This document shows positions 37,313 through 64,000 of a stretch of 64,000 nucleotides of DNA, one piece after another (position 1 is the first letter of the stretch; each line of letters begins with the position of its first letter). The notes beneath the pieces were generated by a model, which saw only the letters and a list, made by a program, of their open reading frames with translations, searched no databases and was not told the DNA's origin. Origin of the DNA: Basidiobolus meristosporus CBS 931.73 (Eukaryota > Fungi > Basidiobolomycota); the NCBI GenBank assembly GCA_002104905.1, contig MCFE01000196.1:70451-134450 (forward strand). The letters run 5' to 3'. A program made the translations under genes and the position numbers.

Positions 37313-38372
37313 TTAACTGGATTCCCAAGTGTAGTGGAAGGAACGTTGGTGATCGGGACATTGGAAAACGGAGGCGATACCGCAATCACCCCACATGTAG
37401 GAGATCATTTCGCACTCGGCCAGCTGTAGCAGGCAGTGCATGGGATGTCCACACCCGTCCACCTTGCATCTCGGATAATCCTCTGCCTGTATCCAGTATG
37501 GCCAACCGAACACTTTGAAGGACCCAGGCTTAGGGTGTAACCGGTACTCGCATATCTCGTCCAGCCTAGGGTCATCACTTTCTAGGCCTAAGTACCTGAG
37601 TGCCTCCTCCGACCCTTCTATCTCGTAGATGTGAGGGATTTCGTGGCACTGGTCCCAGTCCAGAATCGCACACTCCTTTAGGATGGTGAGATCCGGATGG
37701 CTCGTGGGTGGGTGGATGGACGATAGGTACAAGGTTGTTTGGGTCCCCTCGGCCGGATGTCCCGCGCAAGGGATATGGTCTAGCTGGGAGAAGAGGTCTT
37801 TGGTATTTACAAGTCGGGCCAGGTACGTGTTCTGATCCAGAGAGACTTCTTGCCTACAGGTGGGGATCACGAGGAAGTCCCAAAACGTTAGCTCACTCTG
37901 TGCCCTCTGCTGGGGAAGTGGCGAAACCCACTTACTCGTCACAAGGGAGACACACGAAGAGTTGAAACAGCCCTTCGCCACCCGTTTTCTCCACATAAAG
38001 CGGATGCTGGGAAACCTTCTCCAGGCTCAGCTGTATGATGAATGTCACTACGGTGGGGGGGGGGACGAGTGATGGTAACGATTGATCAGGACATGGGTGT
38101 GATGAAAGGGTAGGGAAATTGCATGATTGCTTGGCGCTGATGGTGCGTCGAATTCACTTACTTGGTTTCCCACATTCCCCACAGGCAGGCCAATCCACCT
38201 CGCCTTGATAGAAAAAGGGTCGAATCCCTCCTACTTTGGACTCTGTACTCTCGAAGGCGCGCTCGTCGCTGGACTCGTCATGTAGGTGATAGAGCGCGGG
38301 GACAAAACAAGGCCTGGAGAACAGCGCGATGAATGAGTTGGGTACCTGATAAGCCATGATGGCGCTATCCAA
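37313..38372 (-). CDS. DUF1963/YwqG-like protein, 3 exons, 287 aa
   Basis: Exons 38372-38162, 38047-37936 and 37853-37313 join in frame (864 nt) with GT-AG introns. Motifs: SKVGG...WPACGECGKPMTFIIQL; KVFGWPYWIQ...C...C..PM..LLQL...YMWGDCGIASVFQC. Confidence 0.8.
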
Positions 38373-48223: not shown

Positions 48224-48622
48224 ATGGTCTCCTCCGTCAACAAGATCACAATCGTCAAGAAGCGCACCAAGCACTTCAAGCGCCATCAGTCCGACCGCTA
48301 CAAGACCGTCAAGGAGTCATGGAGAAAGCCCAAGGGTATCGATAACCGCGTTCGTCGCAGATTCAAGGGCCAGATCCCCATGCCCAAGATCGGCTACGGC
48401 TCCAACCAGAAAACCCGCCACCTGATGCCCAACGGCTTCAAGAAGTTCGTCGTCGCTAGCCCCAGGGAGCTCGAGGTGTTGCTGATGCAGAACCGCACCT
48501 ACGCCGCTGAAATCGCCCACAACGTCTCCTCCAAAAACCGCATCGCCATCGTGGAGCGTGCACAGCAGTTGAATGTGAAGGTCACCAACGCCAACGCTCG
48601 TCTTCGCACCCAGGAGAATTAG
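48224..48622 (+). CDS. RPL32: 60S ribosomal protein L32 (eL32)
   Basis: [15 protein letters not shown]...[18 protein letters not shown] probable 5'-UTR intron (gtaagc...catcag) lies just before the ATG. Confidence 0.98.
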
Positions 48623-50482: not shown

Positions 50483-50832
50483 TTTCAAGAATACCTTCCG
50501 CCATTCATATACTTAATATTATCTACGCTCTGACTTGGTTAGGTAGTAATCATTTGGTCATGTAAAAACTGTAGTCATCAATAAAAACACTAAGAGTATT
50601 CATCATTGTGCCCTATTGACATTTTATGATCATTGTATCCGGTAACAGTACCAGTTATTACTAATGACAAACCCCGACGCCTCACAACACATGATCCATA
50701 AATATAGAAATCGGTAAAATAGATTGTTTGTTTTTAAAATATTACATATTTATTAATTCACCACGATGAAGTAATCTAGAAATACTTAAAGTATTACCTA
50801 ACATGCATTTCTACAAACTAAATGTGAGGAAT

Positions 50833-52230
50833 TTATTTGTGCTCAACGGAGACAACCTTGCCAAGCATGACAGCGGTGTTACCATCGAGGAAAGCGATAC
50901 GGGAGAGACCCTCGCAGTTCTTGAAGCTATCGACGATAAGGGGTTGGATAGGTTCGAAGACAACCTCAGCAGCCTCGGAGGCCTTGAGGGAGTGAGGAGA
51001 CTCGAGCTTCTTACGGCCGGTTTCCTTACCGATCTTCCACTTGAGCTCGGTGATCTTACAGGCGGCACGACCGCAACGGACGAAACCGATGGGGGAGTAT
51101 CCGGGCTTGACCTCTCCTGGGATATCGAGGGTTTGGATTTGAGCAGTGAAGTTCTTGACGGGGCGGAGGGTGTTGTCAGTCTTGTAGACCATGACATCAC
51201 CAGCACGGGGCATGTTACCCTTGTCAAGACCCTTGATGTTCATACCAACGTTGTCACCAGTTTGAGCGAACTCAACACGCTTGTGGTGCATTTCGACGGT
51301 GAAGACCTTACCGGTACAGGGGTTACCAGCGGTGTGGGTGGGAAGGAAGACAACTTCGGTGTTGGGGGTGACGGTACCTTGCTCGACACGTCCGGCAACG
51401 ACATCTCCGACACCCTTGATCTTGTAGATACCGGAAACGGGGAGACGCATGGGGGCATCAGCGTTACGGGAAGGAAGGACGACCATGTCGTTCAAGGCAG
51501 TGAGGAGAGTCTCGACGTGGATCTTGTCACCGTTTTGGTTGACAACATCTTGACCCTTCCACCAGGCCATCTTCTCGGACTTCTTCAACAAGTTGTCACC
51601 TTGCCATCCGGAGATGGGGAGGATGGGAACGGATTGTTCGACGAACTCCTTCTTCCATCCAACCTTGATAAGCATGTTGCGCATTTCATCGCGAATTTCG
51701 TTGTAACGGTCTTCCTTGTAACCAGCGGTATCGGAATCCATCTTGTTAACACCAATGATGAGTTGCTTGACACCGAGAAGGTTGAGGAGACGAGCGTGCT
51801 GGCGGGTTTGGCCTTGGATATCTCCAGCCTTGTGGTCACCCTTTTGGATGGCGGTGGTGAAGTTACCATCGGCGGGAACCATGAGAAGGGCAACATCAGC
51901 TTGAGCGGCACCGGAAATCATGTTCTTGATGAAATCTCTGTGTCCGGGGGCATCAATGATGGTGTAATGCCACTTCTCGGTGAAGAACTCCTTGGTGGTG
52001 CAGGAGATGGTGACACCACGTTCACGTTCATCCTTTTGACGATCCATATAGAAAGCAAAAGCGAAGGAAGATTTACCGAGACGCTCGGCTTCTTGCTTCA
52101 ACTTCTCCATTTCACGCTCGGGGATACCGCCGAGTTCGAAGAGAAGACGACCAGTGGTGGTAGACTTACCGGAATCGACGTGACCGCAGATAACGATGGA
52201 AAGATGGTTCTTGTTGTCGGTAGCAGACAT
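50833..52230 (-). CDS. EFL: Elongation factor-like GTPase EFL (not canonical EF-1alpha)
   Basis: 465-aa ORF with HLSIVICGHVDSGKSTTTGRLLFELGGIPERE, SFAFAFYMDRQKDERERGVTI and GQTRQHARLLNLLG, which are EFL-type signatures. Probable 5'-UTR intron 52288-52242. Confidence 0.93.
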   Translation of the reverse strand: MSATDNKNHLSIVICGHVDSGKSTTTGRLLFELGGIPEREMEKLKQEAERLGKSSFAFAFYMDRQKDERERGVTISCTTKEFFTEKWHYTIIDAPGHRDFIKNMISGAAQADVALLMVPADGNFTTAIQKGDHKAGDIQGQTRQHARLLNLLGVKQLIIGVNKMDSDTAGYKEDRYNEIRDEMRNMLIKVGWKKEFVEQSVPILPISGWQGDNLLKKSEKMAWWKGQDVVNQNGDKIHVETLLTALNDMVVLPSRNADAPMRLPVSGIYKIKGVGDVVAGRVEQGTVTPNTEVVFLPTHTAGNPCTGKVFTVEMHHKRVEFAQTGDNVGMNIKGLDKGNMPRAGDVMVYKTDNTLRPVKNFTAQIQTLDIPGEVKPGYSPIGFVRCGRAACKITELKWKIGKETGRKKLESPHSLKASEAAEVVFEPIQPLIVDSFKNCEGLSRIAFLDGNTAVMLGKVVSVEHK

Positions 52231-52321
52231 ATTGATGGTTACTTGGATAGATTAGCTGTCAAGTTGACGAGGAGGAAATGGAACGTACCACATCTCTTTT
52301 AAATGACAGCCAAACGAGCGG

Positions 52322-54022: not shown

Positions 54023-55101
54023 GTCTGTTAACAATGTGAGCCAAATGTATACGCGGTGCTCTTGGGGGTCTGTTCATACGTACCATCAGAGCTTAAAGAA
54101 AGTTTAGGCGCAGGGAGGGAATGCTTAAACATTTTCGGAAGTGCGTTGCGAGATAACGTAGAGAGGCAAGGTGGAGAAGATGTGTCTACTGTGTTCGTTA
54201 AAGCGAACTGACCAGACCAAGGCAGAGAAAGAGAAAATTTCGGGAATTGAGCTGGACCGACAAATGGTCGGGTGAGGAGGAATGGTAACGTTTATAGTAT
54301 CTCAGATGCTGGGCTTCTAGCCGATCCGCACCCTACACCCTATACTGTGCACACTGCACCCTTATTTTCATTTGGATTAGCCCGTCTACAATGGATGCCG
54401 ATTTGAAAACTCTTCAACACGGATCCAGGGTGTCCCCTCGATGTTGTGAGCATTCTAACTCCGAAACCGGAAGATGTCCAGGAAATAAGATTACCGATTG
54501 GGATGAGTTCCGCACAATTCTCAGCAATAAGCCGTCTAGGTAGAATGCATGCGTCAGAAACCTTATCGGCATGGGTGGTGATTTTCCGTTACAAACGATG
54601 CGTTCCTCGAGGCATGCAAGTGTGTTTCTAGGCAGCGGATCTTAAATCAATGGACATCCAATTGTCCCTACATTTCCAGCCAATCCTCTGACGCTGTGGG
54701 CCCATATTCCCTCCATGTTGCTTGGCCTTGTTTATGAGTCCGGTGTAGCCCCGGGACTAGTAGCTGTCGCATGTAACATACCGCCACTGATAATTAGCCG
54801 CCAGCTCTCACCCTCATTCTCACCCTCACCTCATCCTCACACACCACAAAATATCCGAATGCGCAAAGCTACCGCGCTGTTGGCTCATCCCAGTGACACC
54901 GACACCAGGTGTTTTGTCGCTGGCGTTTGCCTGATCGGTATTTTTACGACATCGCACCACGTGACTGCGGGTGGCAGCAAGATATCGACATTTGTAGTGG
55001 TAGGCTTGTGCTTTCCGTAATAAGCCACACTGAAACCCGAATGTCTAAGGTGGTGACAAACAATCTTTAATGGCTTTACAATGTACATAGGGGTTCTAAT
55101 A

Positions 55102-57103
55102 TCATTCGGATCCCACTCCACCGGCTTTTAAGCCCAGTGTTAAAATGGCAAAGATTCCTTCGCCAAGAACAAACCCGGACGCCACCACAATCGAGAGTAC
55201 CTGGATCAACCGAGGCGAGGTGCTCCAGTGACTCACCAGCTCAGTCACCAGTGCGCCCATGACCCTTGGTAGAGTGTAGTTGGGCGGGTTGTATATTCCG
55301 ATGGCAAATGCAATACCTGAGGGTAAATAGCGCAGGAGCCGGGACCGCGGGTACCTAGCCTCCAGTATGGGCGGGATCGAAAAAACCACTCCGAAGAAGA
55401 CGGCAAACAGGGAGGACATTGGGGGGAAGTGGATGCCCGTTGACAAGCCGAGACATGTCCAGCCACACCATGGCGGTTGGTGCTTGGAAGATTGGGCCAG
55501 GGATGGTATAAACACTGGTGTATAATTGGTAGGCACAAACCGCAACGAACACCGACACAAAAGACCCTATCAGCTGTCCGAAGAACTGCGCTCGTGGCGA
55601 AGCATGTAGCAAATGACCGGTCTTCATATCTGAGGTAACGTTAGCATCGGCAACACAATGGACTTACCCTTGGCACTTACTAACCTTGCATCATGTCGCC
55701 AGCTTGCTGTGCCCCGGCCTCGGCAATCCCGCCTGCGACAATATTGGCAGCGATCCCTCCAGGAATCACTCCTGCGAATATCACCTGGGACACCTTTCCA
55801 ATTCCACTAACGGGGTTCAAGTCAGTCTCCCCTAACGCCCGCACGGCCAAAACACTCAGCAGACACGCCAACATCACCGATAAAAGGGTCGCGTACACCG
55901 GGATATCAAACAGAATCGTGACAATCACCACACACAATACCGAAGAAAAGCACAGCCCGCCATACATCACCCAGGATGGAACAAGTTGATCGGGTGGGCA
56001 AGGCTCTTCACGTTCGTAGCTTCTAGAAGGCCGACTGCAATGCTGCTGCACCTCCTTGACAACGATCACCCCAAGGCTGACCAAGCTCTCCGAGATCATT
56101 ACCGCTAGAGATATCCACAGAATCCACCCACGCGCGCCAGTCTGCGCGTCGTCGACCGGCCCCTGGGCCCAGCCATGGTAGTAGCTTAGCGGAGACAAAA
56201 GCCCCCAGCCCACTATCGCTCCGAATAGCATGGCTAACGTGGTAGGTAGGCCCATGATGATCCCTTGGCCCATGTATGAAAGCGCTGTTGCCAACTGGTG
56301 AGTGTACTGCCATGATGTTAAACCTCATTGGGCACTTACATGGTGTCAGAAACCAATTCCAACTCTTGGCGGTTTGCCCAAACACCGGCAGTTGCGATAA
56401 GATCGGGACGAAATGGCTTGACAGCGTGTATGCACCGGAAAGGGCAAACGACCACAACAAACATTTCCATTGTGTGCGCCAGCTCACATCCTCCACCGAT
56501 AGGGATTTTTTGTGCAGAAGGCTGATCATTTGCGCAGTTGCCGTGCCTGATGGGAAACGAAGTTTTTCCTTGATGATCTAAGTAAATGCTGGTTATTGTC
56601 GGCCGTGGATCCATTTCCATGGTGAGATAGCATACCACTTGTTTGCGAAGAGGAATGGAGAAGAAAACTCCGAAAAACGCAACACCCAGCCCCCAAAGGA
56701 TCAACTGCGCGCTGCTTAGCACTACGGGTCCTCCCTCTTTTTCTGTCAACAGTGTGAGCGCCGGTATAATCCCCACAAACCCTAAACCCTCTCGAGGTTA
56801 GAGATATATTACGCAAGGGTTGGGGCGGAATAATATAATACCTCCGGCTAACGGCATGGTGGCAGTAGCCACAGCTGTTGTCTGTAGGACCACGTTTTCT
56901 GCCACCCCAAAGGGTACGCTCAGCCATCGCTGAAGGAGCTTGAAAACCACAAAGCCAAGTAGCGAGGATTGTAGAGACATCATCGAGATCCAACCAGTTT
57001 GTAGCCCGAAATACATGTTACTGAAGCAGAGTGCTGAACCGACAAGGAGCCCCGTAAATACTGCTCGAAACTTTAGAATGGAGGCCAGCAGGGTAGTCAG
57101 CAT
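55102..57103 (-). CDS. OPT/YSL-family oligopeptide transporter, multi-exon, with an apparent +1 frameshift at 55421-55426
   Basis: Motifs RAVFTGLLVG..LCFSNMYFGLQTGW, ENVVLQT, LRFPSGTATA, ETDLNPVSGIGK, DMKTGHLL.ASPRAQF, SGFVLGEG. Confidence 0.9.
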
Positions 57104-57820
57104 TTCCTTGTTTCTGGACTTAAATATAACAGCTAGTCAAATAGGCCAGCTTACCGTAAAGTGTGGTAGGGCAGAATCTAGGTTTGCTGAATCAATCAAC
57201 GTGAAAGTGGCTCTTGGGTCGGCTTCATCTTGAGAATTCAACCGTAGAAAAGTACAACTGCATTAGTACAAAGAACAACGAACTGGCGAGTTAGTAACAA
57301 GGGAGAAGTATGCACCTTGAAAAGGTGCATTGGAAGGAGTATCACCAAAGTCGGTCTCTTCCCGCTGGAGCGGTTGGTACCCAGCTGCCAGCATATTGGC
57401 TGTTGAGTTTAGGAGAATGTTCGCATTATGGCATAACTATAACTGTGAATTAAATCAACATGTCTACCAATCCGCACAAAGCATTTTCCCATTTTTACAA
57501 GTATGATCCCAGACGCCGATCTAGAGAACCAGACTTATCCTATATATGCATGTATTACGTTTGATTATTGTTGCTAATCCATATTTCTGAAATGTTTCAA
57601 GCTTAATGCAGGTTGAGTTTCTACTGATTTTAAATGGCCTCCAGTACTGTCCACAAAAACTTTCTGTTAGGGTACTCATGCCTCATAACCTTATTGGTGT
57701 GTTATGCTGCATGATTCTAGGGCGCATTATTGGATGTGATTTGGTATACTAAAAAAATTGTACAATATCCACTTATTGCTTATTGAGCTCCAATAAAGTA
57801 TGTTCACTTTTAGTGAAGCT

Positions 57821-57900
57821 TTGTAAGACTAATGATAGGGATGCTAAGTGACTGGGAGTACAAGTAGAGTATGTGGTTTTCACCTAATGACTTATTCAGG
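57821..57900 (-). repeat. Short Copia LTR fragment
   Basis: ttgtaagact...aagtgactgggagtacaagtagagtatgtggttttcacctaatg aligns to the LTR end at 29566. Confidence 0.65.
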
Positions 57901-60231
57901 ATACAACTTGCATATATATGAATTATGCCAACACCCAAAGGTGTAAGAATGGATGGCATCTGATGGTTATGTTGGGATAGAGTAATCCCAAATATTGGCA
58001 GTTCTAATTCTAATGGCTCCTGTGCTTATTCCTAGACATACTTGGGAGACTGGGACAAGGCACTACTTCAACAGAGTAAATGAGATAAATATGCTATTTG
58101 TATGATGATCACCTTAGTAGCGGAAGATACTGATATCTTAACATGAGACAAATAACGTGAATGTTTCTTATTGCTTTGCAAGCCTTGAAAGTACCGCTTT
58201 GACCGCTTCAATTCTTATGATTGACTGCAATATATGGACATTCATAGGGCAATTGGAATACTGTAGCCATCGATGCCGAATCCATTAATAGAGAAATACG
58301 TGGAGTCACCCGCCCTTCACAGACAATTCAGCTTGGTGTGTTCGGGTCATTGGTATGATTATCCTGTCAAAAACTAGAATTCATCGGATGCTGATCATAG
58401 TCACGTTGTTGTTGCAATAAAGCCGATCAGCAGGATGCCAACTCAAGGTAGGGTTGCCTTCCGCCAAACCTTCACCGTTCATGAAAATGGTCATTAAATA
58501 TGGGAGAATATCATTGATGAATATAGCGAATATCCTTTGACACTCACCCAAGTATCTGTACTAAATGTTATAAACTTAACCAATGGTAGAGCTTTTTGCT
58601 CCATTAATTGGCGTCAAGGAACCACTGGTTGTAAGGATGTTCCGTTGTTGATGTATAATGCTGTAGTCTAAGAATGATGTAGAATGCTGGAGTTCTGGTT
58701 ACCTTGCCACTTTATAGAAGTTCCATGCAACTGTGCAATTAGCTCAAGTTTAGCAAGAACCCAGATATTCGGTACGCCAGCATTCCTATAATGGAATATG
58801 GGGTTTGATCCGATTAAAAAAGCCTAAATATTCATGCGTTCGATGCTCATAGCCCATATAGGCTAATTTATCCAACCCACCGTTCCATTCATCCCAATTA
58901 TACTACGGATCGTATTCGGACGATATATATAATGTATCGAATCACAAGGGTACTCAAGCAGTGAATATTGTAGTGCATATACTGCCAATCAGTCCAATCG
59001 ACCAGTTGGCGCCAAACATTATAGTATAGAAATAGTCGGCTGAAGTGTAAGTAAATGCAAACGCAATGGTATCAACTACGGATACAGTTGCCCAGGAGAT
59101 GGCTTCACTCAATACTTATCGATATCCAACATTCCCTAGTAATGCCGAGTGGTATAAGTTTGGTGCAACCCCGCACGGGTGCAACCCCACACGTAAACCA
59201 ACTTGTGTGTGATAATCATGGTGAAGCATTTTGAGAGTTGTGATCGACTAGAAAGCTTGATAACAATGTGTGTAGCTTGAGACGCTCCGGATACGTGAAG
59301 CGCGTAAAATTGGTATGCAGAGTAATACGTTATTGATTAGAGGAAACAGTAAGCCTTACATGGGTGAAATTATTAATACTCAAGAGATAGACTGGCAGAT
59401 TGCTTTGATATAATGAAGAATTGGGAGTAGTACCTATTGCTAGCCAACAAATATTTTAGGCTATTATACTGTAATATGCCTTATAATAAGTTCATATAAA
59501 TAACTTTGGCAAAAATTCATACAACCAGAAATGTTGATTAGGGGGTGGAGGAGTACGAAATGTGTAAAATGAGGGGAGTACGAAACGTGTAAAATGAGGC
59601 TTGATATAGCTTTAGGTAAAGAGCGGAAGTCCACCCAAGCACCTCAGACTCATTATGAGCCAGAATACTGCACAGGTCCCTATCAGAGGCTTTCAAGGGA
59701 CATCCCCAAACAGCCATACATACATCCCTATCCCTAACCTAAAGAAAATCACGGCTCGGTCTAAGCAAAAAGGTAAGTAAAGCAGTACTCATTGAAATTC
59801 TTACTAGCATATGGAATGAAGACAATCAATATCATCAGAAAAGGCTACAACCATTGCAGAGCATACACTATCTCAAGAATTGGTATGATATGATCGTTAC
59901 AATGTACCAGAACTCTCCCGCTCTCTCTCTATATGCTTAATATGGATTCAGCTATAGTAAGCGTCATGTGAGGATGCCAGCACTAGCTGTCCCATCTAAA
60001 TCAGCTTGATCAAACAATCCTCAGTTCGATTAAATCCATTTTAGAGGTTGGTTTTCTTATGTTGTACTATGCTATAGCAACAAATGTACCATGTGGAAGG
60101 AAAGCTTAGAATACGGGAAACCAAATGAACCAAAAATTTCCCATAGCACAGCATCACAATTGCATGGATGTAATACTTTTCAGGTACTGAACCTGCTGGA
60201 GAGCTTCCAAGTTCCCAGAAACTTTGGCAAG

Positions 60232-60239
60232 TATAAAAG
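60232..60239 (+). promoter_or_regulatory. TATA box of the small peptide gene
   Basis: TATAAAAG about 70 bp upstream of the ATG at 60303. Confidence 0.55.
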
Positions 60240-60302
60240 ATCAGCATTGATTAGTTTCAAGTCCATCAAATTGGTGTCTTCTCTCCAGCTGTCTTTTGAA
60301 AG

Positions 60303-60470
60303 ATGAACCTATCTGTTGCTACTCTTCTCTTGACTTTCGTTGCTCTGGCCACCTTGACTACTGAGGCTACTCCAGTTCCTGGCGGTGATACTATTGAACC
60401 TCTTGCTTGCTGCGTCGAATGGTGTGTTGATCAAAATAGATGCTGCCGTTGGAATGCTTGCCTCCCATGA
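60303..60470 (+). CDS. 55-aa secreted cysteine-rich peptide precursor
   Basis: MNLSVATLLLTFVALATLTTEATPVPGGDTIEPLACCVEWCVDQNRCCRWNACLP*: signal peptide, short pro-region, six Cys. Upstream TATA, downstream AATAAA (~60496), and T/C-ending codon bias. Below the 60-aa cutoff of the ORF track. Confidence 0.75.
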   Translation: MNLSVATLLLTFVALATLTTEATPVPGGDTIEPLACCVEWCVDQNRCCRWNACLP

Positions 60471-62955
60471 ATCAAGCTGCTTAGTCTGCTGAATGAATAA
60501 ACGGATCTATGTGGCAGCGGTCCCATTTAGTGGTATTCTCCAAAGTGTGATGTTTGTTGACCCTAATTACTGGTAAAACCCAAATCAACCGGTATCTATG
60601 CTGTAAATCCCGCGCATAAAAGTTACACTAAGTGGAAACAAGGTGAGAAGCCATGCAATGAAAAGCAATAACGGCATAAGCGATAAGAGTATTACTTCAA
60701 TACAAATGCTTGAGGTATTTGGACTGTAGTACCTACTCACCGGGTGTTTGACCAGTATGATGCGTGTTAGCCTTGTGATTGGTTGGTTAGATGTCGTAGT
60801 TGTTGGAATCAATGCCAAGATGAAGTACTGCTTGGGTCCAATTGGGGAGAAGTAAAGCCCAGAGTCAGTAAAAAACAAGTTTGAAGGCTAGCTAGTAAAC
60901 AGGTGTATACATGTGTGAATACGCAATATGGTTTGGGGATTGGTGGAACTCTAGTACTCCATCCTTCTGTTCCATAATTGATGCAAAATAGCCATGAATT
61001 GCAATGCTATTGGAGGATTATCGCTCGTAATGCTTTGAATCAATGTAAAGTGATTTCTGACATGAGAACAGATACATACTTATATGAATTTGTATTTGTT
61101 TGACAACAATCCTGGCCCTGGGTTCAATAATTTGAGGCGGTTGCCGATCAAATTGATTGGGATTGATTGAGTAAGCATTCACATCCAAATTAACTTCACC
61201 ATGTCACTTACATCTCACTCATCATTCTGGCTGAGAGTCATGTATAGGCCTTCACTGTATATTTCCATATCATCTATCTATATGGGTTTGGCAGGAGTAG
61301 CGTGTACAGCAGCAATATATATGTATGCAGGTGCTGCAGTAAAGAGCCTTTCTACTTTTCAGCACTATATTCAAGCATTGTTCTAGCCCTGATCTTTTTC
61401 AGTGTTATGGAAATTTGTTGGCATCTACAGGGTACTCCTTAAGTTCTGATTGGACAAATATACAAAGGGTAACTGAGCATAAGTTTACATAATAAAGGAG
61501 GAATTCCAGGATAAACTAATAACATCAAGAATTATGATTGTACAAAGTAAGTGGTACGTAAGCTTGGGTGTTGTGGAAAAACTACTGAAGGAGTGATTTT
61601 GTAACCAAGTATTTGTTCTTTTTGTGGGACTTGATTATGGATATTTAATAGGCATGGAATACTTTTGTAAAGTCAATATTATGAATAAACTAAAGAATTC
61701 CTGGGTAAGATATACTACATGTTTATCAAAGATTTCTGATTTGCATCAACAGAATACAGTATACTATTACATACAACATACAGGCTTTTATACGCACTCT
61801 TTCTAGGCAAAGTTTGATGGCTAGCAGATATTTTTTTTAAAGGCTATGCGCATTAATGGCTGCATTTGGGGTGCAATACTATCACAAGAGCATATTATAA
61901 GTATATGCATGCCATAGAAAAATATTTTGGAAATTTCTGATAGGGACTTGGTTGAGTTTTGAACTCCGACTTTTGGGTACGATGTTGAGTGCTGCAAAAG
62001 ATAGGGGATCATCGTAAGCATAATATTCAGAACATTTAATAATAAAAGTCCAAATTAGAAGCCAAAAGATGGTTTTGCGGATTAGTATCTAATTGTAGCT
62101 GCTTTGTGTACTCTTTTGCACACTAAGTTGCACTTTCATTCCGGAATACAAGTTCACACTTACATCATGTATTGTTTTCTGTTGCTTACGAAATACCAAA
62201 GTTAAAATCTGATAAACAAGTGAGCGTTCCGCTGGGCTACGCATTATTAGCAATCAAACATTCCATATACACAGGCAATGTGAACATTCTCCCACCTTTG
62301 CTTTATCCCAAACCCTGATTGTTACAAATATTTCAAAATATCTCGCGTTTTGCCTTTAACAGAATAGTGTCTATCCAAGTTGGCAGACATTGTTAATGTC
62401 GTACGTACATTAGATTTGTGCCTTGCCAGAGATCATAAGTCATTCATATCATATATGTTTTCGACTATATTGTGGTTTTATATGATGGAGATAGATGCTG
62501 ATATGCATTGTACGCATTTCAATTCATATCTAGCACAAGCTCCACACAAATGGGTATCGATATAAAACAACTTGGGCTTGACATTGTCATGGACAGCTAC
62601 ACTTCAATATTCATGCACCTTTGCCTAATTTGAGGAGTTACCAACTCATTCTCACGTTACAATAAAGAAAAATCTTGATTTCCTTAGAATTGGTTTCTTA
62701 GGCTTTTTGACCCAACAGGCTCAAGAAGCAGGGCCATTGAGAAAGGTAGAGGGCGATGCATCATTCTGGTCACAACGAGAGAGCCTGCTTCCGTTACACT
62801 GCAGAATGAAAAATTCTTTTGGGCATTGTAAGCATTCATGAACCAAGTATATATAAGAAGCTACCCCTCACAATTCAAGGTATAACATCTCACTTGGAGT
62901 AATAATCGTCTCCCCCCCAGATAAATATCTTGCAACATCAAATCACCTGTCAATT

Positions 62956-63535
62956 ATGTACAAAATGAACCCAGGAAGTCGCTACAAAATGACGCAAATT
63001 ACCCATGCCGATGGTGCCTCACAACATGTCCTCATTGTAGGAGGTGGAGTCTCTGGCCTTAAGAAGTTCCGGATGTAAAGTAACTGTTATAGCGAAACAA
63101 TATGCCCGACCTGGAGCTCATGGTAACGAAATTGTCTCTGAGATAGCTGGTGCATTGTGGGAGTGGACTCCGGCAGTTTGCGACTCTCATGTGAAGGATA
63201 CTGAGGAACAACTTGAAGCCCTTAAAATATGGAGCCAAGTATCATACATCCGATTCAAGGATATAGCTGATAGATATGGCGCCAAAGAGACCGGTATCCG
63301 TAAGCGTAAGTCATACTATCTATTCGATCGCAAGCTTGGACCAGATCCAAAGAGTATGCCAGGGTTTCAACGATAATCTTCCACATCTGGTTGAGTAGTA
63401 CAAGATCAACACGCACTTATTGGAGAAAGGCTACAACATTCTTGATGGGCATGAGCACCTTTCTTTTGTAGTTAATCCCGAAAATTATCTCCACTGGTTG
63501 ACAAGATTGGTCAAACCAGAAAGGATGCCTATTAT
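62956..63535 (+). pseudogene. D-amino-acid oxidase-like FAD oxidoreductase pseudogene
   Basis: HVLIVGGGVSGL (GxGxxG), a frame change, then KVTVIAK...IVSEIAGALWEW.PAVC...SYIRF and DGHEHLSFVVNPENYLHWL. At least two frameshifts or stops, and truncated at the 3' end. Confidence 0.75.
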
Positions 63536-63856
63536 AACTACAATACAGACTGCGCAGTTAATTTAGTTTAATGTATATAAATGCTAGTTTACATGGGGTT
63601 TTGATACTGGCACAATTTTCTGTGATCAGAGATGTAACAAACATGGTGGCTGTATAGGATTTGTTGTTGCCTGGGTTATTTCTAATTTGTCAAGTTAAAC
63701 TAGTCCTAACCAATATTGGAAAATTCAGGCATCCAACTATGCACATACCTGTAGGAATCAAGCCAGTAAGCCTATCAATTTCAACATGCAAAGTAAAGCT
63801 TTTGCTATATCAAAAGATAGAGGTAGGATGATGAAAGTCACCAGGTAGTAAAGTCT

Positions 63857-63925
63857 ATTGTAAGAATTTTGGAGTTATTAGAAGCAATTGGGAGAACAAG
63901 TAGATTATATGGTCTTCACTTAATG
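63857..63925 (-). repeat. Short Copia LTR fragment
   Basis: ttgtaagaattttggagttattagaagcaattgggagaacaagtagatt aligns to the LTR end at 29566. Confidence 0.65.
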
Positions 63926-64000
63926 GAAGCCAACATAAGTCACTTGAATGAAGAAACACCAATGCTTTGGCACAGGAGATTTTGACACATCAATTTTGAT

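What the first reader, a model, noticed from the sequence alone, without database searches (positions are those of the whole stretch)
60303..60470. Hidden 55-aa secreted six-cysteine peptide gene (CC-x3-C-x5-CC-x4-C)
Seen: a clean intronless ORF with a hydrophobic signal peptide ending near TEA, a short acidic/Pro pro-segment, and a ~21-aa core ACCVEWCVDQNRCCRWNACLP built from two CC-x(1-2)-W half-repeats. It has its own TATA box and poly(A) signal, and sits isolated in an AT-rich accessory region with LTR debris. Known: signal-pro-Cys-core architecture is typical of disulfide-rich toxins, defensins and effectors, and such genes are routinely missed by annotation. Inference: a candidate undescribed fungal toxin, antimicrobial or effector peptide family. 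I do not recognise the Cys spacing as a named family.
Basis: partly seen in the sequence, partly recalled or inferred. Interest (0 to 1): 0.75.

Follow-up and report, generated by a model that had tools for sequence, protein, structure and literature searches.

The report
Conserved tiny secreted six-cysteine fungal peptide
A very small gene missed in this Basidiobolus (frog- and lizard-gut fungus) genome is real, because a sister species keeps it with all six cysteines; it encodes an exported mini-peptide with a cysteine pattern matching no named family, and its job is untested.

Summary
**Observation.** The ORF is exactly as described: window 60303-60470 (+), 55 aa, with a hydrophobic N-terminus and a C-terminal core of CC-x3-C-x5-CC-x4-C. 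That pattern occurs once in the window.

**Real gene.** A read of 1.84 billion proteins found one true relative, a 62-aa hypothetical protein of Basidiobolus ranarum (KAK9759584.1).
- It is 65% identical, with the same six cysteines and spacing.
- Similarity between the species starts at the TATA box, runs through the coding sequence, and recurs at AATAAA. Further out the flanks are about 42% and 52-56% identical.
- Five of six Cys codons carry synonymous swaps, and changes by codon position are 12/10/22.
- A neutral simulation keeps the frame and all six Cys in 5.5e-4 of runs.

**Annotation.** The peptide is absent from the public protein collection that holds this genome's RPL32, so it is probably unannotated here.

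**Family.** There is no match in Pfam, NCBIfam, PDB sequences or Rfam. The framework is unnamed; the closest described one is the mirror-image C-CC-C-CC of plant beta-ginkgotides.

**Reading.** It is most likely a secreted three-disulfide, protease-resistant ligand, neutral to acidic and so not a classic cationic antimicrobial. Function, processing and disulfide pairing are inferred only.

**Scan history.** The scan had not noted this peptide before, though it noted other hidden small-peptide genes in this genome.

The parts
60232..60239 (+). TATA box (TATAAAAG), 64-71 nt upstream of the ATG
   Evidence: Read. It lies in a 12-nt block (AGTATAAAAGAT) identical in the B. ranarum locus L001, while sequence further upstream is only 42% identical.
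60240..60302 (+). Predicted transcription start region and short 5' leader, with no upstream ATG and the context AAAG-ATG-A
   Evidence: The stretch from the TATA box to the ATG is 67% identical between the species, and the start context is conserved.
60303..60368 (+). Codons 1-22: predicted ER signal peptide (uncharged hydrophobic residues 3-20, T-x-E-A before the likely cut)
   Evidence: Hydropathy and the -3/-1 rule. This is the most conserved DNA segment, 83% identical. It is the only part that AlphaFold models with some confidence, as a helix. SignalP was not available.
60369..60404 (+). Codons 23-34: acidic, Pro-rich linker (x-P-V-P ... D-T-x-x-P-L). It may be a pro-segment or an N-terminal tail.
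   Evidence: it is 12 residues here and 19 in B. ranarum, through an in-frame 21-nt indel. Both ends are conserved and there is no dibasic site.
60405..60467 (+). Codons 35-55: six-cysteine core A-CC-x3-C-x5-CC-x4-C-x-P
   Evidence: All six Cys plus A35, E39, an aromatic at 40, D43, R46, W50, A52 and P55 are kept in B. ranarum. Five of six Cys codons have synonymous TGC/TGT swaps. P(all six Cys kept | 24 of 63 sites changed) = 3e-4.
60468..60470 (+). Stop codon TGA
   Evidence: The stop is at the same position in B. ranarum.
60496..60501 (+). Poly(A) signal AATAAA, 26 nt after the stop
   Evidence: GAATAAA is also present in L001, after a 36-nt insertion.

Best explanation
Window 60232-60501 (+) is a complete, intronless, very small protein-coding gene of Basidiobolus. 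It is unannotated here and annotated as a hypothetical protein in B. ranarum.

How it most likely works:
- The 55-aa product enters the ER through a cleavable signal peptide of about 22 residues.
- The remaining 33 residues (40 in B. ranarum) are exported.
- Their last 21 residues fold into a compact module held by three disulfides: six Cys within 18 residues, ending in a conserved C-terminal Pro.
- The most likely role is a protease-resistant extracellular ligand that acts on another organism or cell, by binding a specific target rather than by lysing membranes. That would be a toxin-like, antagonistic or signal peptide suited to the protease-rich gut and litter habitats of this fungus.

Shown: the gene is real, the frame and the Cys are under constraint, and the promoter and poly(A) elements are conserved.

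Inferred: secretion, disulfide formation, possible trimming of the linker, and the ligand function.
For: - Orthologue: the only true hit among 1.84 billion proteins is P0002, a 62-aa B. ranarum protein. E = 1.4e-11, 65% identity, full-length match, same Cys spacing.
- Extent of DNA similarity: it begins at the TATA box and runs through the CDS. Segment identities are upstream 42%, leader 67%, signal 83%, linker 75%, core 62% and 3' side 52-56%, where GAATAAA recurs.
- Coding signature: differences by codon position are 12/10/22, Nei-Gojobori dN/dS is about 0.35, the indel is 21 nt, and five of six Cys codons changed synonymously.
- Neutral simulation: P = 5.5e-4 for keeping both the frame and the six Cys.
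- Other strand: the antisense frames are nearly open, but the substitution pattern and the signal orientation fit the + frame.
- Secretion: the signal-like N-terminus is present in both species.
- Charge: the post-signal peptide has net charge -2 here and -3 in B. ranarum; the core has 0 and -1.
- Not an RNA gene: no Rfam match.
Against: - No transcript or peptide evidence could be consulted.
- Only two sequences exist, so selection estimates are crude, and synonymous sites in the core are saturated.
- No signal-peptide predictor was available. The n-region here has no basic residue.
- AlphaFold models are poor (mean pLDDT 55 and 58), so the fold and the disulfide pairing are unknown.
- Nothing ties the peptide to a target.
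- Codon use (T-ending) differs from the C-ending bias of the RPL32 gene in the same window, so high expression is not indicated.
Confidence: 0.6

Rival explanations
1. It is an endogenous signal, such as a pheromone, quorum or developmental peptide sensed by Basidiobolus itself, and not an agent directed at other organisms.
For: The design is the same. Eight of the fifteen non-Cys core positions are conserved or similar between the species, which suits a ligand with a conserved receptor. It is single-copy in the window and in L001. Earlier notes of this scan report other small secreted peptide-precursor genes in this genome, which I did not check.
Against: No receptor or processing gene is linked to it. 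The neighbouring OPT transporter gene is about 3 kb away, divergent, and not specific evidence. Known fungal peptide pheromones are not three-disulfide peptides (my own knowledge).
Confidence: 0.2
2. It is a secreted metal-binding or redox peptide, or the precursor of a further modified peptide (RiPP), in which the cysteines serve chemistry other than simple disulfides.
For: Paired CC motifs occur in metal-binding peptides (my own knowledge). The conserved N-terminal part could serve as a recognition leader.
Against: - An ER signal implies an oxidising folding compartment.
- There are no Kex2 (KR) sites and no repeated cores.
- None of the larger ORFs tested at 35-64 kb matched a RiPP-tailoring family in Pfam. 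What matched was an OPT transporter, an eEF1A-type GTPase, RPL32 and DUF1963.
- No NCBIfam match to bacterial Cys-rich precursor families.
Confidence: 0.1
3. It is a chance ORF, or a conserved non-coding element that happens to be open.
For: The ORF is short, it is unannotated in this genome, there is no transcript evidence, and the antisense frames have few stops.
Against: - The frame, the start, the stop and six Cys are conserved at 26% nucleotide divergence, P = 5.5e-4.
- Substitutions are enriched at the third codon position.
- The indel is in frame.
- TATA and AATAAA are conserved in the sense orientation.
- There is no Rfam match.
Confidence: 0.05
4. It is a functional mimic of gut peptide hormones or heat-stable enterotoxins (the guanylin/ST type), acting on a host intestinal receptor.
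For: Resemblance only. It is a tiny three-disulfide peptide with two CC pairs and a CC-x-x-N-A-C stretch here (S-A-C in B. ranarum), and its producer lives in vertebrate guts (PMC9391592).
Against: The Cys order differs: CC-C-CC-C against CC-CC-C-C for ST (from my own knowledge). No Pfam family matched even at E = 10. The Asn of N-A-C is not conserved in B. ranarum.
Confidence: 0.05

Closest known systems
Basidiobolus ranarum hypothetical protein K7432_017268 (KAK9759584.1, UniRef100_A0ABR2WDM1), 62 aa
   Same: It is the orthologue. It is 65% identical over its full length, with the same signal, the same six Cys and spacing, and the same C-terminal Pro. It has the same TATA box and AATAAA signal, and it also sits in AT-rich, ORF-poor DNA.
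   Different: It has a 7-residue insertion in the linker, and 9 of the 15 non-Cys core residues differ (Y for W at the first aromatic). It is annotated in GenBank, whereas the window's copy is not in the public protein collection.
beta-Ginkgotides of Ginkgo biloba (Wong et al. 2017, PMC5522442)
   Same: These are also 'hyperdisulfide-constrained' peptides. They have six Cys in a 16-residue core with two CC pairs and only three loops (37.5% Cys, against 33% in an 18-residue core here). They are made from a precursor with a signal peptide and resist heat and proteases.
   Different: The framework is the mirror image: C-x2-CC-x6-C-x2-CC against CC-x3-C-x5-CC-x4-C. There is no sequence similarity. 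They are known only from gymnosperms and have a four-domain precursor. Their pairing is known (I-IV, II-VI, III-V), whereas here it is unknown.
Conotoxin framework III (CC-C-C-CC, M superfamily) and similar venom mini-peptides
   Same: They share the size class, three disulfides, a signal-linker-core precursor, and the pattern of a well-conserved signal with a more variable core around fixed Cys (signal 83% against core 62% DNA identity).
   Different: The Cys order differs. The only PDB-sequence hit to a conotoxin is not significant (E = 3.6 and 9.1). There is no basic processing site before the core. The producer is a fungus, not a mollusc.
Heat-stable enterotoxin ST / guanylin peptides
   Same: They are tiny gut-stable peptides with two CC pairs and three disulfides (ST).
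   Different: The Cys order is CC-CC-C-C in ST (my own knowledge), there is no Pfam match, and there is no conserved N-P-A motif.
Orphan small secreted proteins of zygomycete fungi (Chang et al. 2022, PMC9391592)
   Same: This is the general class: secreted, under 300 aa, lineage-restricted and without a Pfam domain. That study counts 47,494 such proteins in 132 genomes, in 3,144 orthologous groups, of which over two-thirds have no Pfam similarity.
   Different: This peptide is far smaller than typical members, it has an unusually dense Cys core, and it is missing from this genome's gene list.

Membership tests
Fungal small secreted cysteine-rich proteins (generic class) | N-terminal signal peptide, under 300 aa, several Cys, no enzyme domain | tested here: met
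   Hydrophobic residues 3-20 with -3/-1 cleavage sites in both species (heuristic only). 55 aa with 6 Cys. No Pfam domain.
Heat-stable enterotoxin ST / guanylin | Cys order CC-CC-C-C (ST) and a match to the Pfam enterotoxin or guanylin models | tested here: not met
   The order here is CC-C-CC-C. No Pfam family matched at E up to 10.
Conotoxin framework III / M superfamily | Cys order CC-C-C-CC and the superfamily signal sequence | tested here: not met
   The order differs. Mu-conotoxin CnIIIC scores only E = 3.6 and 9.1. No conotoxin appeared among the hits of the whole-library search.
beta-Ginkgotides | Cys spacing C-x2-CC-x6-C-x2-CC | tested here: not met
   The order is the mirror image and the loop lengths differ.
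beta-Ginkgotides | Disulfide pairing I-IV, II-VI, III-V | not testable with these tools
   The AlphaFold models are too poor to read a pairing from (pLDDT 55 and 58).
Cysteine-stabilised alpha-beta fungal defensins | C-x3-C on a helix paired with C-x-C on a strand, and a cationic mature peptide | tested here: not met
   The core has no C-x-C motif. Net charge is 0 to -3.
Knottins (inhibitor cystine knot) | Six Cys, usually C-C-CC-C-C, with knotted I-IV, II-V, III-VI pairing | tested here: inconclusive
   The usual spacing is not met. Pairing cannot be determined here.
Kex2-processed fungal RiPP precursors (dikaritin type) | Repeated cores flanked by KR sites, with neighbouring DUF3328 or oxidase genes | tested here: not met
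   There is a single core and no KR site. Among the larger ORFs tested at 35-64 kb, Pfam matched only OPT, an eEF1A-type GTPase, RPL32 and DUF1963.

The most novel reading that the evidence does not exclude
This may be the founding member of a Basidiobolus-specific class of conotoxin-sized, hyper-disulfide peptides. It would have a new fold (framework CC-C-CC-C, the mirror of the plant beta-ginkgotides). The fungus would release it in the vertebrate gut or onto insects as a protease-proof ligand for a specific host or microbial receptor or channel.
Probability: 0.25. Interest if true: 0.7.

Novelty: new variant of a known kind. Interest (0 to 1): 0.42.

Why it matters
Peptides of about 20 residues locked by three disulfides are prized as stable drug scaffolds and as probes of receptors and channels. 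They are known mainly from animal venoms, bacteria and plants, and hardly at all from early-diverging fungi.

A conserved example with an unnamed cysteine framework, made by a gut-dwelling and occasionally pathogenic fungus, offers three things:
- a cheap peptide that can be synthesised and tested for new fold chemistry;
- a possible handle on how Basidiobolus deals with gut bacteria, insects or the host;
- a reminder that gene lists of such fungi omit very short secreted-peptide genes.

Orphan small secreted proteins are very common in zygomycete genomes, so without a function this remains a modest finding.

Tried and rejected
- **Word-index protein search, single peptide:** no candidates. 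With the two-sequence profile it returned only P0002, out of 2 candidates. So no annotated paralogue shares even the signal peptide.
- **P0001 from the whole-library search:** a 1457-aa translated tandem repeat whose score is the sum of 17 short matches. Rejected as an artefact.
- **Metagenome scan:** none of 236 pattern matches encodes a relative.
- **Prokaryote genome scan:** one 15-residue match in an alphaproteobacterial MAG lies out of frame and antisense inside a 497-aa GTPase gene that I take for der/EngA. Rejected as chance.
- **Family and structure libraries:** Pfam, NCBIfam, PDB sequences (single sequence and profile) and Rfam gave nothing significant.
- **ESM Atlas:** the best feature score was 0.75, below any useful level.
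- **AlphaFold:** both the whole precursor and the post-signal part gave low-confidence models. I therefore ran no fold search, since matches to such models are meaningless.
- **Paralogues:** tblastn of both peptides against the window and L001 found none.
- **Highly expressed gene idea:** rejected. RPL32 in the same window prefers C-ending codons, while the peptide gene prefers T-ending ones.
- **Inside an LTR element:** the window shows nothing for it. Only short LTR fragments flank a unique 6-kb stretch with much higher CpG content than the transposon sea.
- **The 21-nt insertion in B. ranarum:** it contains GTAAGT...TAG but is far too short to be an intron.
- **The look-up of encoding contigs:** it worked for P0002 but was closed. 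So I could not list the genes called around the peptide in this genome's own public record. Non-annotation rests on the exact-sequence look-ups.
- **Literature:** every hit for 'CC-C-CC-C' that I opened was part of a longer framework, apart from one inconsistent wording in the beta-ginkgotide paper.

Full report
**1.

- The + strand carries an ORF from ATG 60303 to TGA 60468-60470. It is 55 codons long, with an in-frame stop two codons before the ATG.
- The product has an uncharged hydrophobic stretch at residues 3-20. A short Pro-rich, acidic linker follows, and then a 21-residue end with six Cys arranged CC-x3-C-x5-CC-x4-C.
- A six-frame regular-expression scan finds this pattern, and a much looser version of it, only here in the 64-kb window.
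- TATAAAAG lies at 60232-60239 with no ATG between it and the start codon. AATAAA lies at 60496-60501.
- The ORF's third codon positions are 51% T. That is the highest value among 131 ORFs of 40 codons or more in the AT-rich parts of the window.

**2. Setting**

- Earlier notes of this scan name the genome as Basidiobolus meristosporus. My own evidence agrees with the genus, because the only relative of the peptide is from B. ranarum.
- Bases 1-34 kb are a transposon sea with CpG almost erased (o/e 0.01-0.16).
- Bases 35-57 kb are gene-rich at about 50% GC. They hold a DUF1963-domain ORF, RPL32e, an eEF1A-type GTPase and a multi-exon OPT oligopeptide transporter.
- The peptide gene lies in the next block, 57-64 kb, at 36-41% GC. 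Only two short LTR-family fragments occur there, at 57846-57918 and from 63847 to the window end. The 6 kb between them is unique in the window and keeps a CpG o/e of 0.4-0.7.
- So 'AT-rich with LTR debris' is right, but nothing in the window places the gene inside a recognisable element.
- The OPT gene starts about 3 kb upstream on the other strand. I see no reason to link the two.

**3. Is it a gene?**

- The word-index protein search found nothing, and the exact sequence is not in the 15-billion-protein collection.
- That collection does hold the exact product of the RPL32 gene of this window, from NCBI, UniRef and EukProt. This genome's public annotation is therefore represented, and the peptide gene is most likely unannotated in it.
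- The claim then rested on the presence or absence of relatives, so I ran the whole-library HMMER search. It gave two hits.
  - P0001 is a translated tandem repeat that scores by adding 17 short matches. It is an artefact.
  - P0002 is a 62-aa protein of B. ranarum, KAK9759584.1, named 'hypothetical protein K7432_017268'. It lies on a 2,271-bp contig.
- P0002 aligns end to end at 65% identity. All six Cys are in the same spacing, and a 7-residue insertion sits in the linker.

**4. The DNA comparison is the strongest evidence**

| Segment (window coordinates) | Identity to B. ranarum |
|---|---|
| Upstream of the TATA box (60130-60226) | 42% |
| TATA box to ATG (60227-60302) | 67% |
| Signal-peptide codons (60303-60368) | 83% |
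| Linker (60369-60404) | 75% |
| Cys core (60405-60467) | 62% |
| 3' side (60471-60600) | 52-56% |

- blastn between the B. ranarum contig and the whole window aligns only 60230-60476, from the TATA box to just past the stop.
- A fine alignment shows a 12-nt block around the TATA box that is identical. The start context is conserved, the stop is in the same place, and GAATAAA appears again after a 36-nt insertion.
- Within the CDS, differences fall 12, 10 and 22 on codon positions 1, 2 and 3.
- The single indel is 21 nt.
- Nei-Gojobori dN/dS is about 0.35.
- Five of the six Cys codons differ by a synonymous TGC/TGT swap.
- I ran a neutral simulation at the observed divergence, 44 of 168 sites. 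The start, the stop, an open frame and all six Cys survive together in 5.5e-4 of runs. For the core alone, all six Cys survive in 3e-4 of runs.
- The two antisense frames have few stops in both species. The third-position excess, the in-frame start and stop, and the orientation of TATA and AATAAA all fit the + frame.
- No Rfam family matches.
- In B. ranarum the gene also stands alone in AT-rich, ORF-poor DNA.
- I put the probability that this is a real protein-coding gene at about 0.9.

**5. What the product looks like**

- Both orthologues have a hydrophobic maximum at residues 5-16. Their first internal charge is at E21. They share a T-x-E-A site that fits the -3/-1 rule, followed by x-P-V-P.
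- No signal-peptide predictor was available, so secretion is an inference. It is a strong one.
- After the cut, 33 residues remain here and 40 in B. ranarum.
- The linker has no dibasic site, so nothing shows that it is removed. Its conserved ends could mark trimming sites or belong to the folded peptide. These are x-P-V-P, a motif of the kind that dipeptidyl aminopeptidases trim in other secreted peptides (my own knowledge), and D-T-x-x-P-L-A just before the first CC.
- In the core, the six Cys plus Ala35, Glu39, an aromatic at 40, Asp43, Arg46, Trp50, Ala52 and the C-terminal Pro55 are kept. The other positions differ.
- Net charge is 0 or -1 for the core and -2 or -3 for the whole exported part. 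This does not suit a cationic, membrane-lytic antimicrobial.
- Six Cys in 18 residues (33%) puts the peptide in the 'hyperdisulfide-constrained' class described for beta-ginkgotides.
- AlphaFold gave only low-confidence models (pLDDT 55 and 58). The fold and the pairing remain open, and I made no fold search on them.

**6. Most likely mechanism**

- Shown: a conserved small gene whose frame and Cys are under constraint.
- Inferred:
  - co-translational entry into the ER, signal cleavage near residue 22, and formation of three disulfides;
  - export of a compact peptide with a C-terminal Pro, a design that resists proteases;
  - action as a specific extracellular ligand.
- The signal-peptide DNA is better conserved than the core, around fixed Cys. 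That pattern is familiar from venom and defence peptide families. With two sequences it is only suggestive.
- The habitat gives such a stable peptide an obvious use. The habitat is herptile gut, insect carriage and litter (PMC9391592; PMC10964425, listed). That is ecology, not evidence.
- The rivals are an endogenous signal peptide, a metal-binding or further modified peptide, a gut-hormone or enterotoxin mimic, and a chance ORF. They are weighed in their own sections.

**7. Comparison with what is known**

- No Pfam, NCBIfam or PDB-sequence match is significant. The Atlas search gave only a 0.75 lead.
- In the papers I could search, every occurrence of 'CC-C-CC-C' that I opened was part of a longer framework: conotoxin XVII, D-superfamily patterns and spider WAP-like toxins. 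The one exception is a wording in the beta-ginkgotide paper, whose abstract and figures give C-CC-C-CC.
- The closest described framework is therefore the mirror image, in gymnosperm peptides with no sequence similarity.
- Conotoxin framework III, the ST enterotoxins, CS-alpha-beta defensins, typical knottins and Kex2-type RiPP precursors each fail a defining feature (see the membership table).
- The peptide fits only the generic class of orphan small secreted cysteine-rich proteins. That class is very large in zygomycetes.

**8. Verdict**

- It is a new family-level variant of a known kind (secreted disulfide-rich mini-peptides) with an unnamed Cys framework.
- One member is already deposited as a hypothetical protein. 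This copy is apparently unannotated.
- Function is untested, only two members are known, and orphan secreted proteins are common. I therefore score interest at about 0.4.
- The scan had not recorded this peptide before: the look-up by sequence was blank. It has recorded other hidden small secreted peptide genes in the same genome.

Noticed in passing
window 50833-52230 (-): A 465-codon single ORF encodes an eEF1A-type translation GTPase (the GTP_EFTU domain, domains 2 and 3, and the eEF1A C-terminal domain). The 499-codon ORF on the opposite strand (50803-52302) is its antisense shadow and has no family match. I did not determine whether this is canonical EF-1alpha or the EF-like paralogue.
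   Followed up: partly
window 48224-48622 (+): An intronless ribosomal protein L32e gene (Pfam E = 4e-52). Its exact product is in the public collection. It has a strong C-ending codon bias (C3 55%), in contrast with the T-ending bias of the peptide gene.
   Followed up: partly
window about 55100-57100 (-): A multi-exon OPT oligopeptide transporter gene. Four ORF pieces match PF03169 from profile position 4 to 620. It is divergently oriented, about 3 kb from the peptide gene. No functional link is shown.
   Followed up: partly
window 1-34900 against 35000-57000 and 57000-64000: There are three compositional states. The first is a transposon sea with CpG o/e 0.01-0.16. The second is a gene-rich block with GC about 50% and CpG o/e 0.6-0.97. 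The third is an AT-rich block (GC 36-41%) that keeps CpG o/e 0.4-0.7, except at the LTR fragments (57801-58000 and 63601-64000, with zero CpG). AT-richness and CpG erasure are therefore separable here.
   Followed up: partly
window 37313-37996 (-): A 227-codon ORF with a DUF1963 domain match (E = 1.2e-5, just above the gathering score).
   Followed up: no
window 63044-63376 (+): A 110-codon ORF in the AT-rich block with no Pfam or PDB-sequence match. It may be an exon of an unrecognised gene, or noise.
   Followed up: partly
P0001: A 1457-aa 'protein' in the public library is a translated tandem repeat with a unit of roughly 60 residues. It reaches E = 2e-23 against a 55-aa query by summing 17 short matches. 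This is a reminder that repeat ORFs can top such searches.
   Followed up: yes
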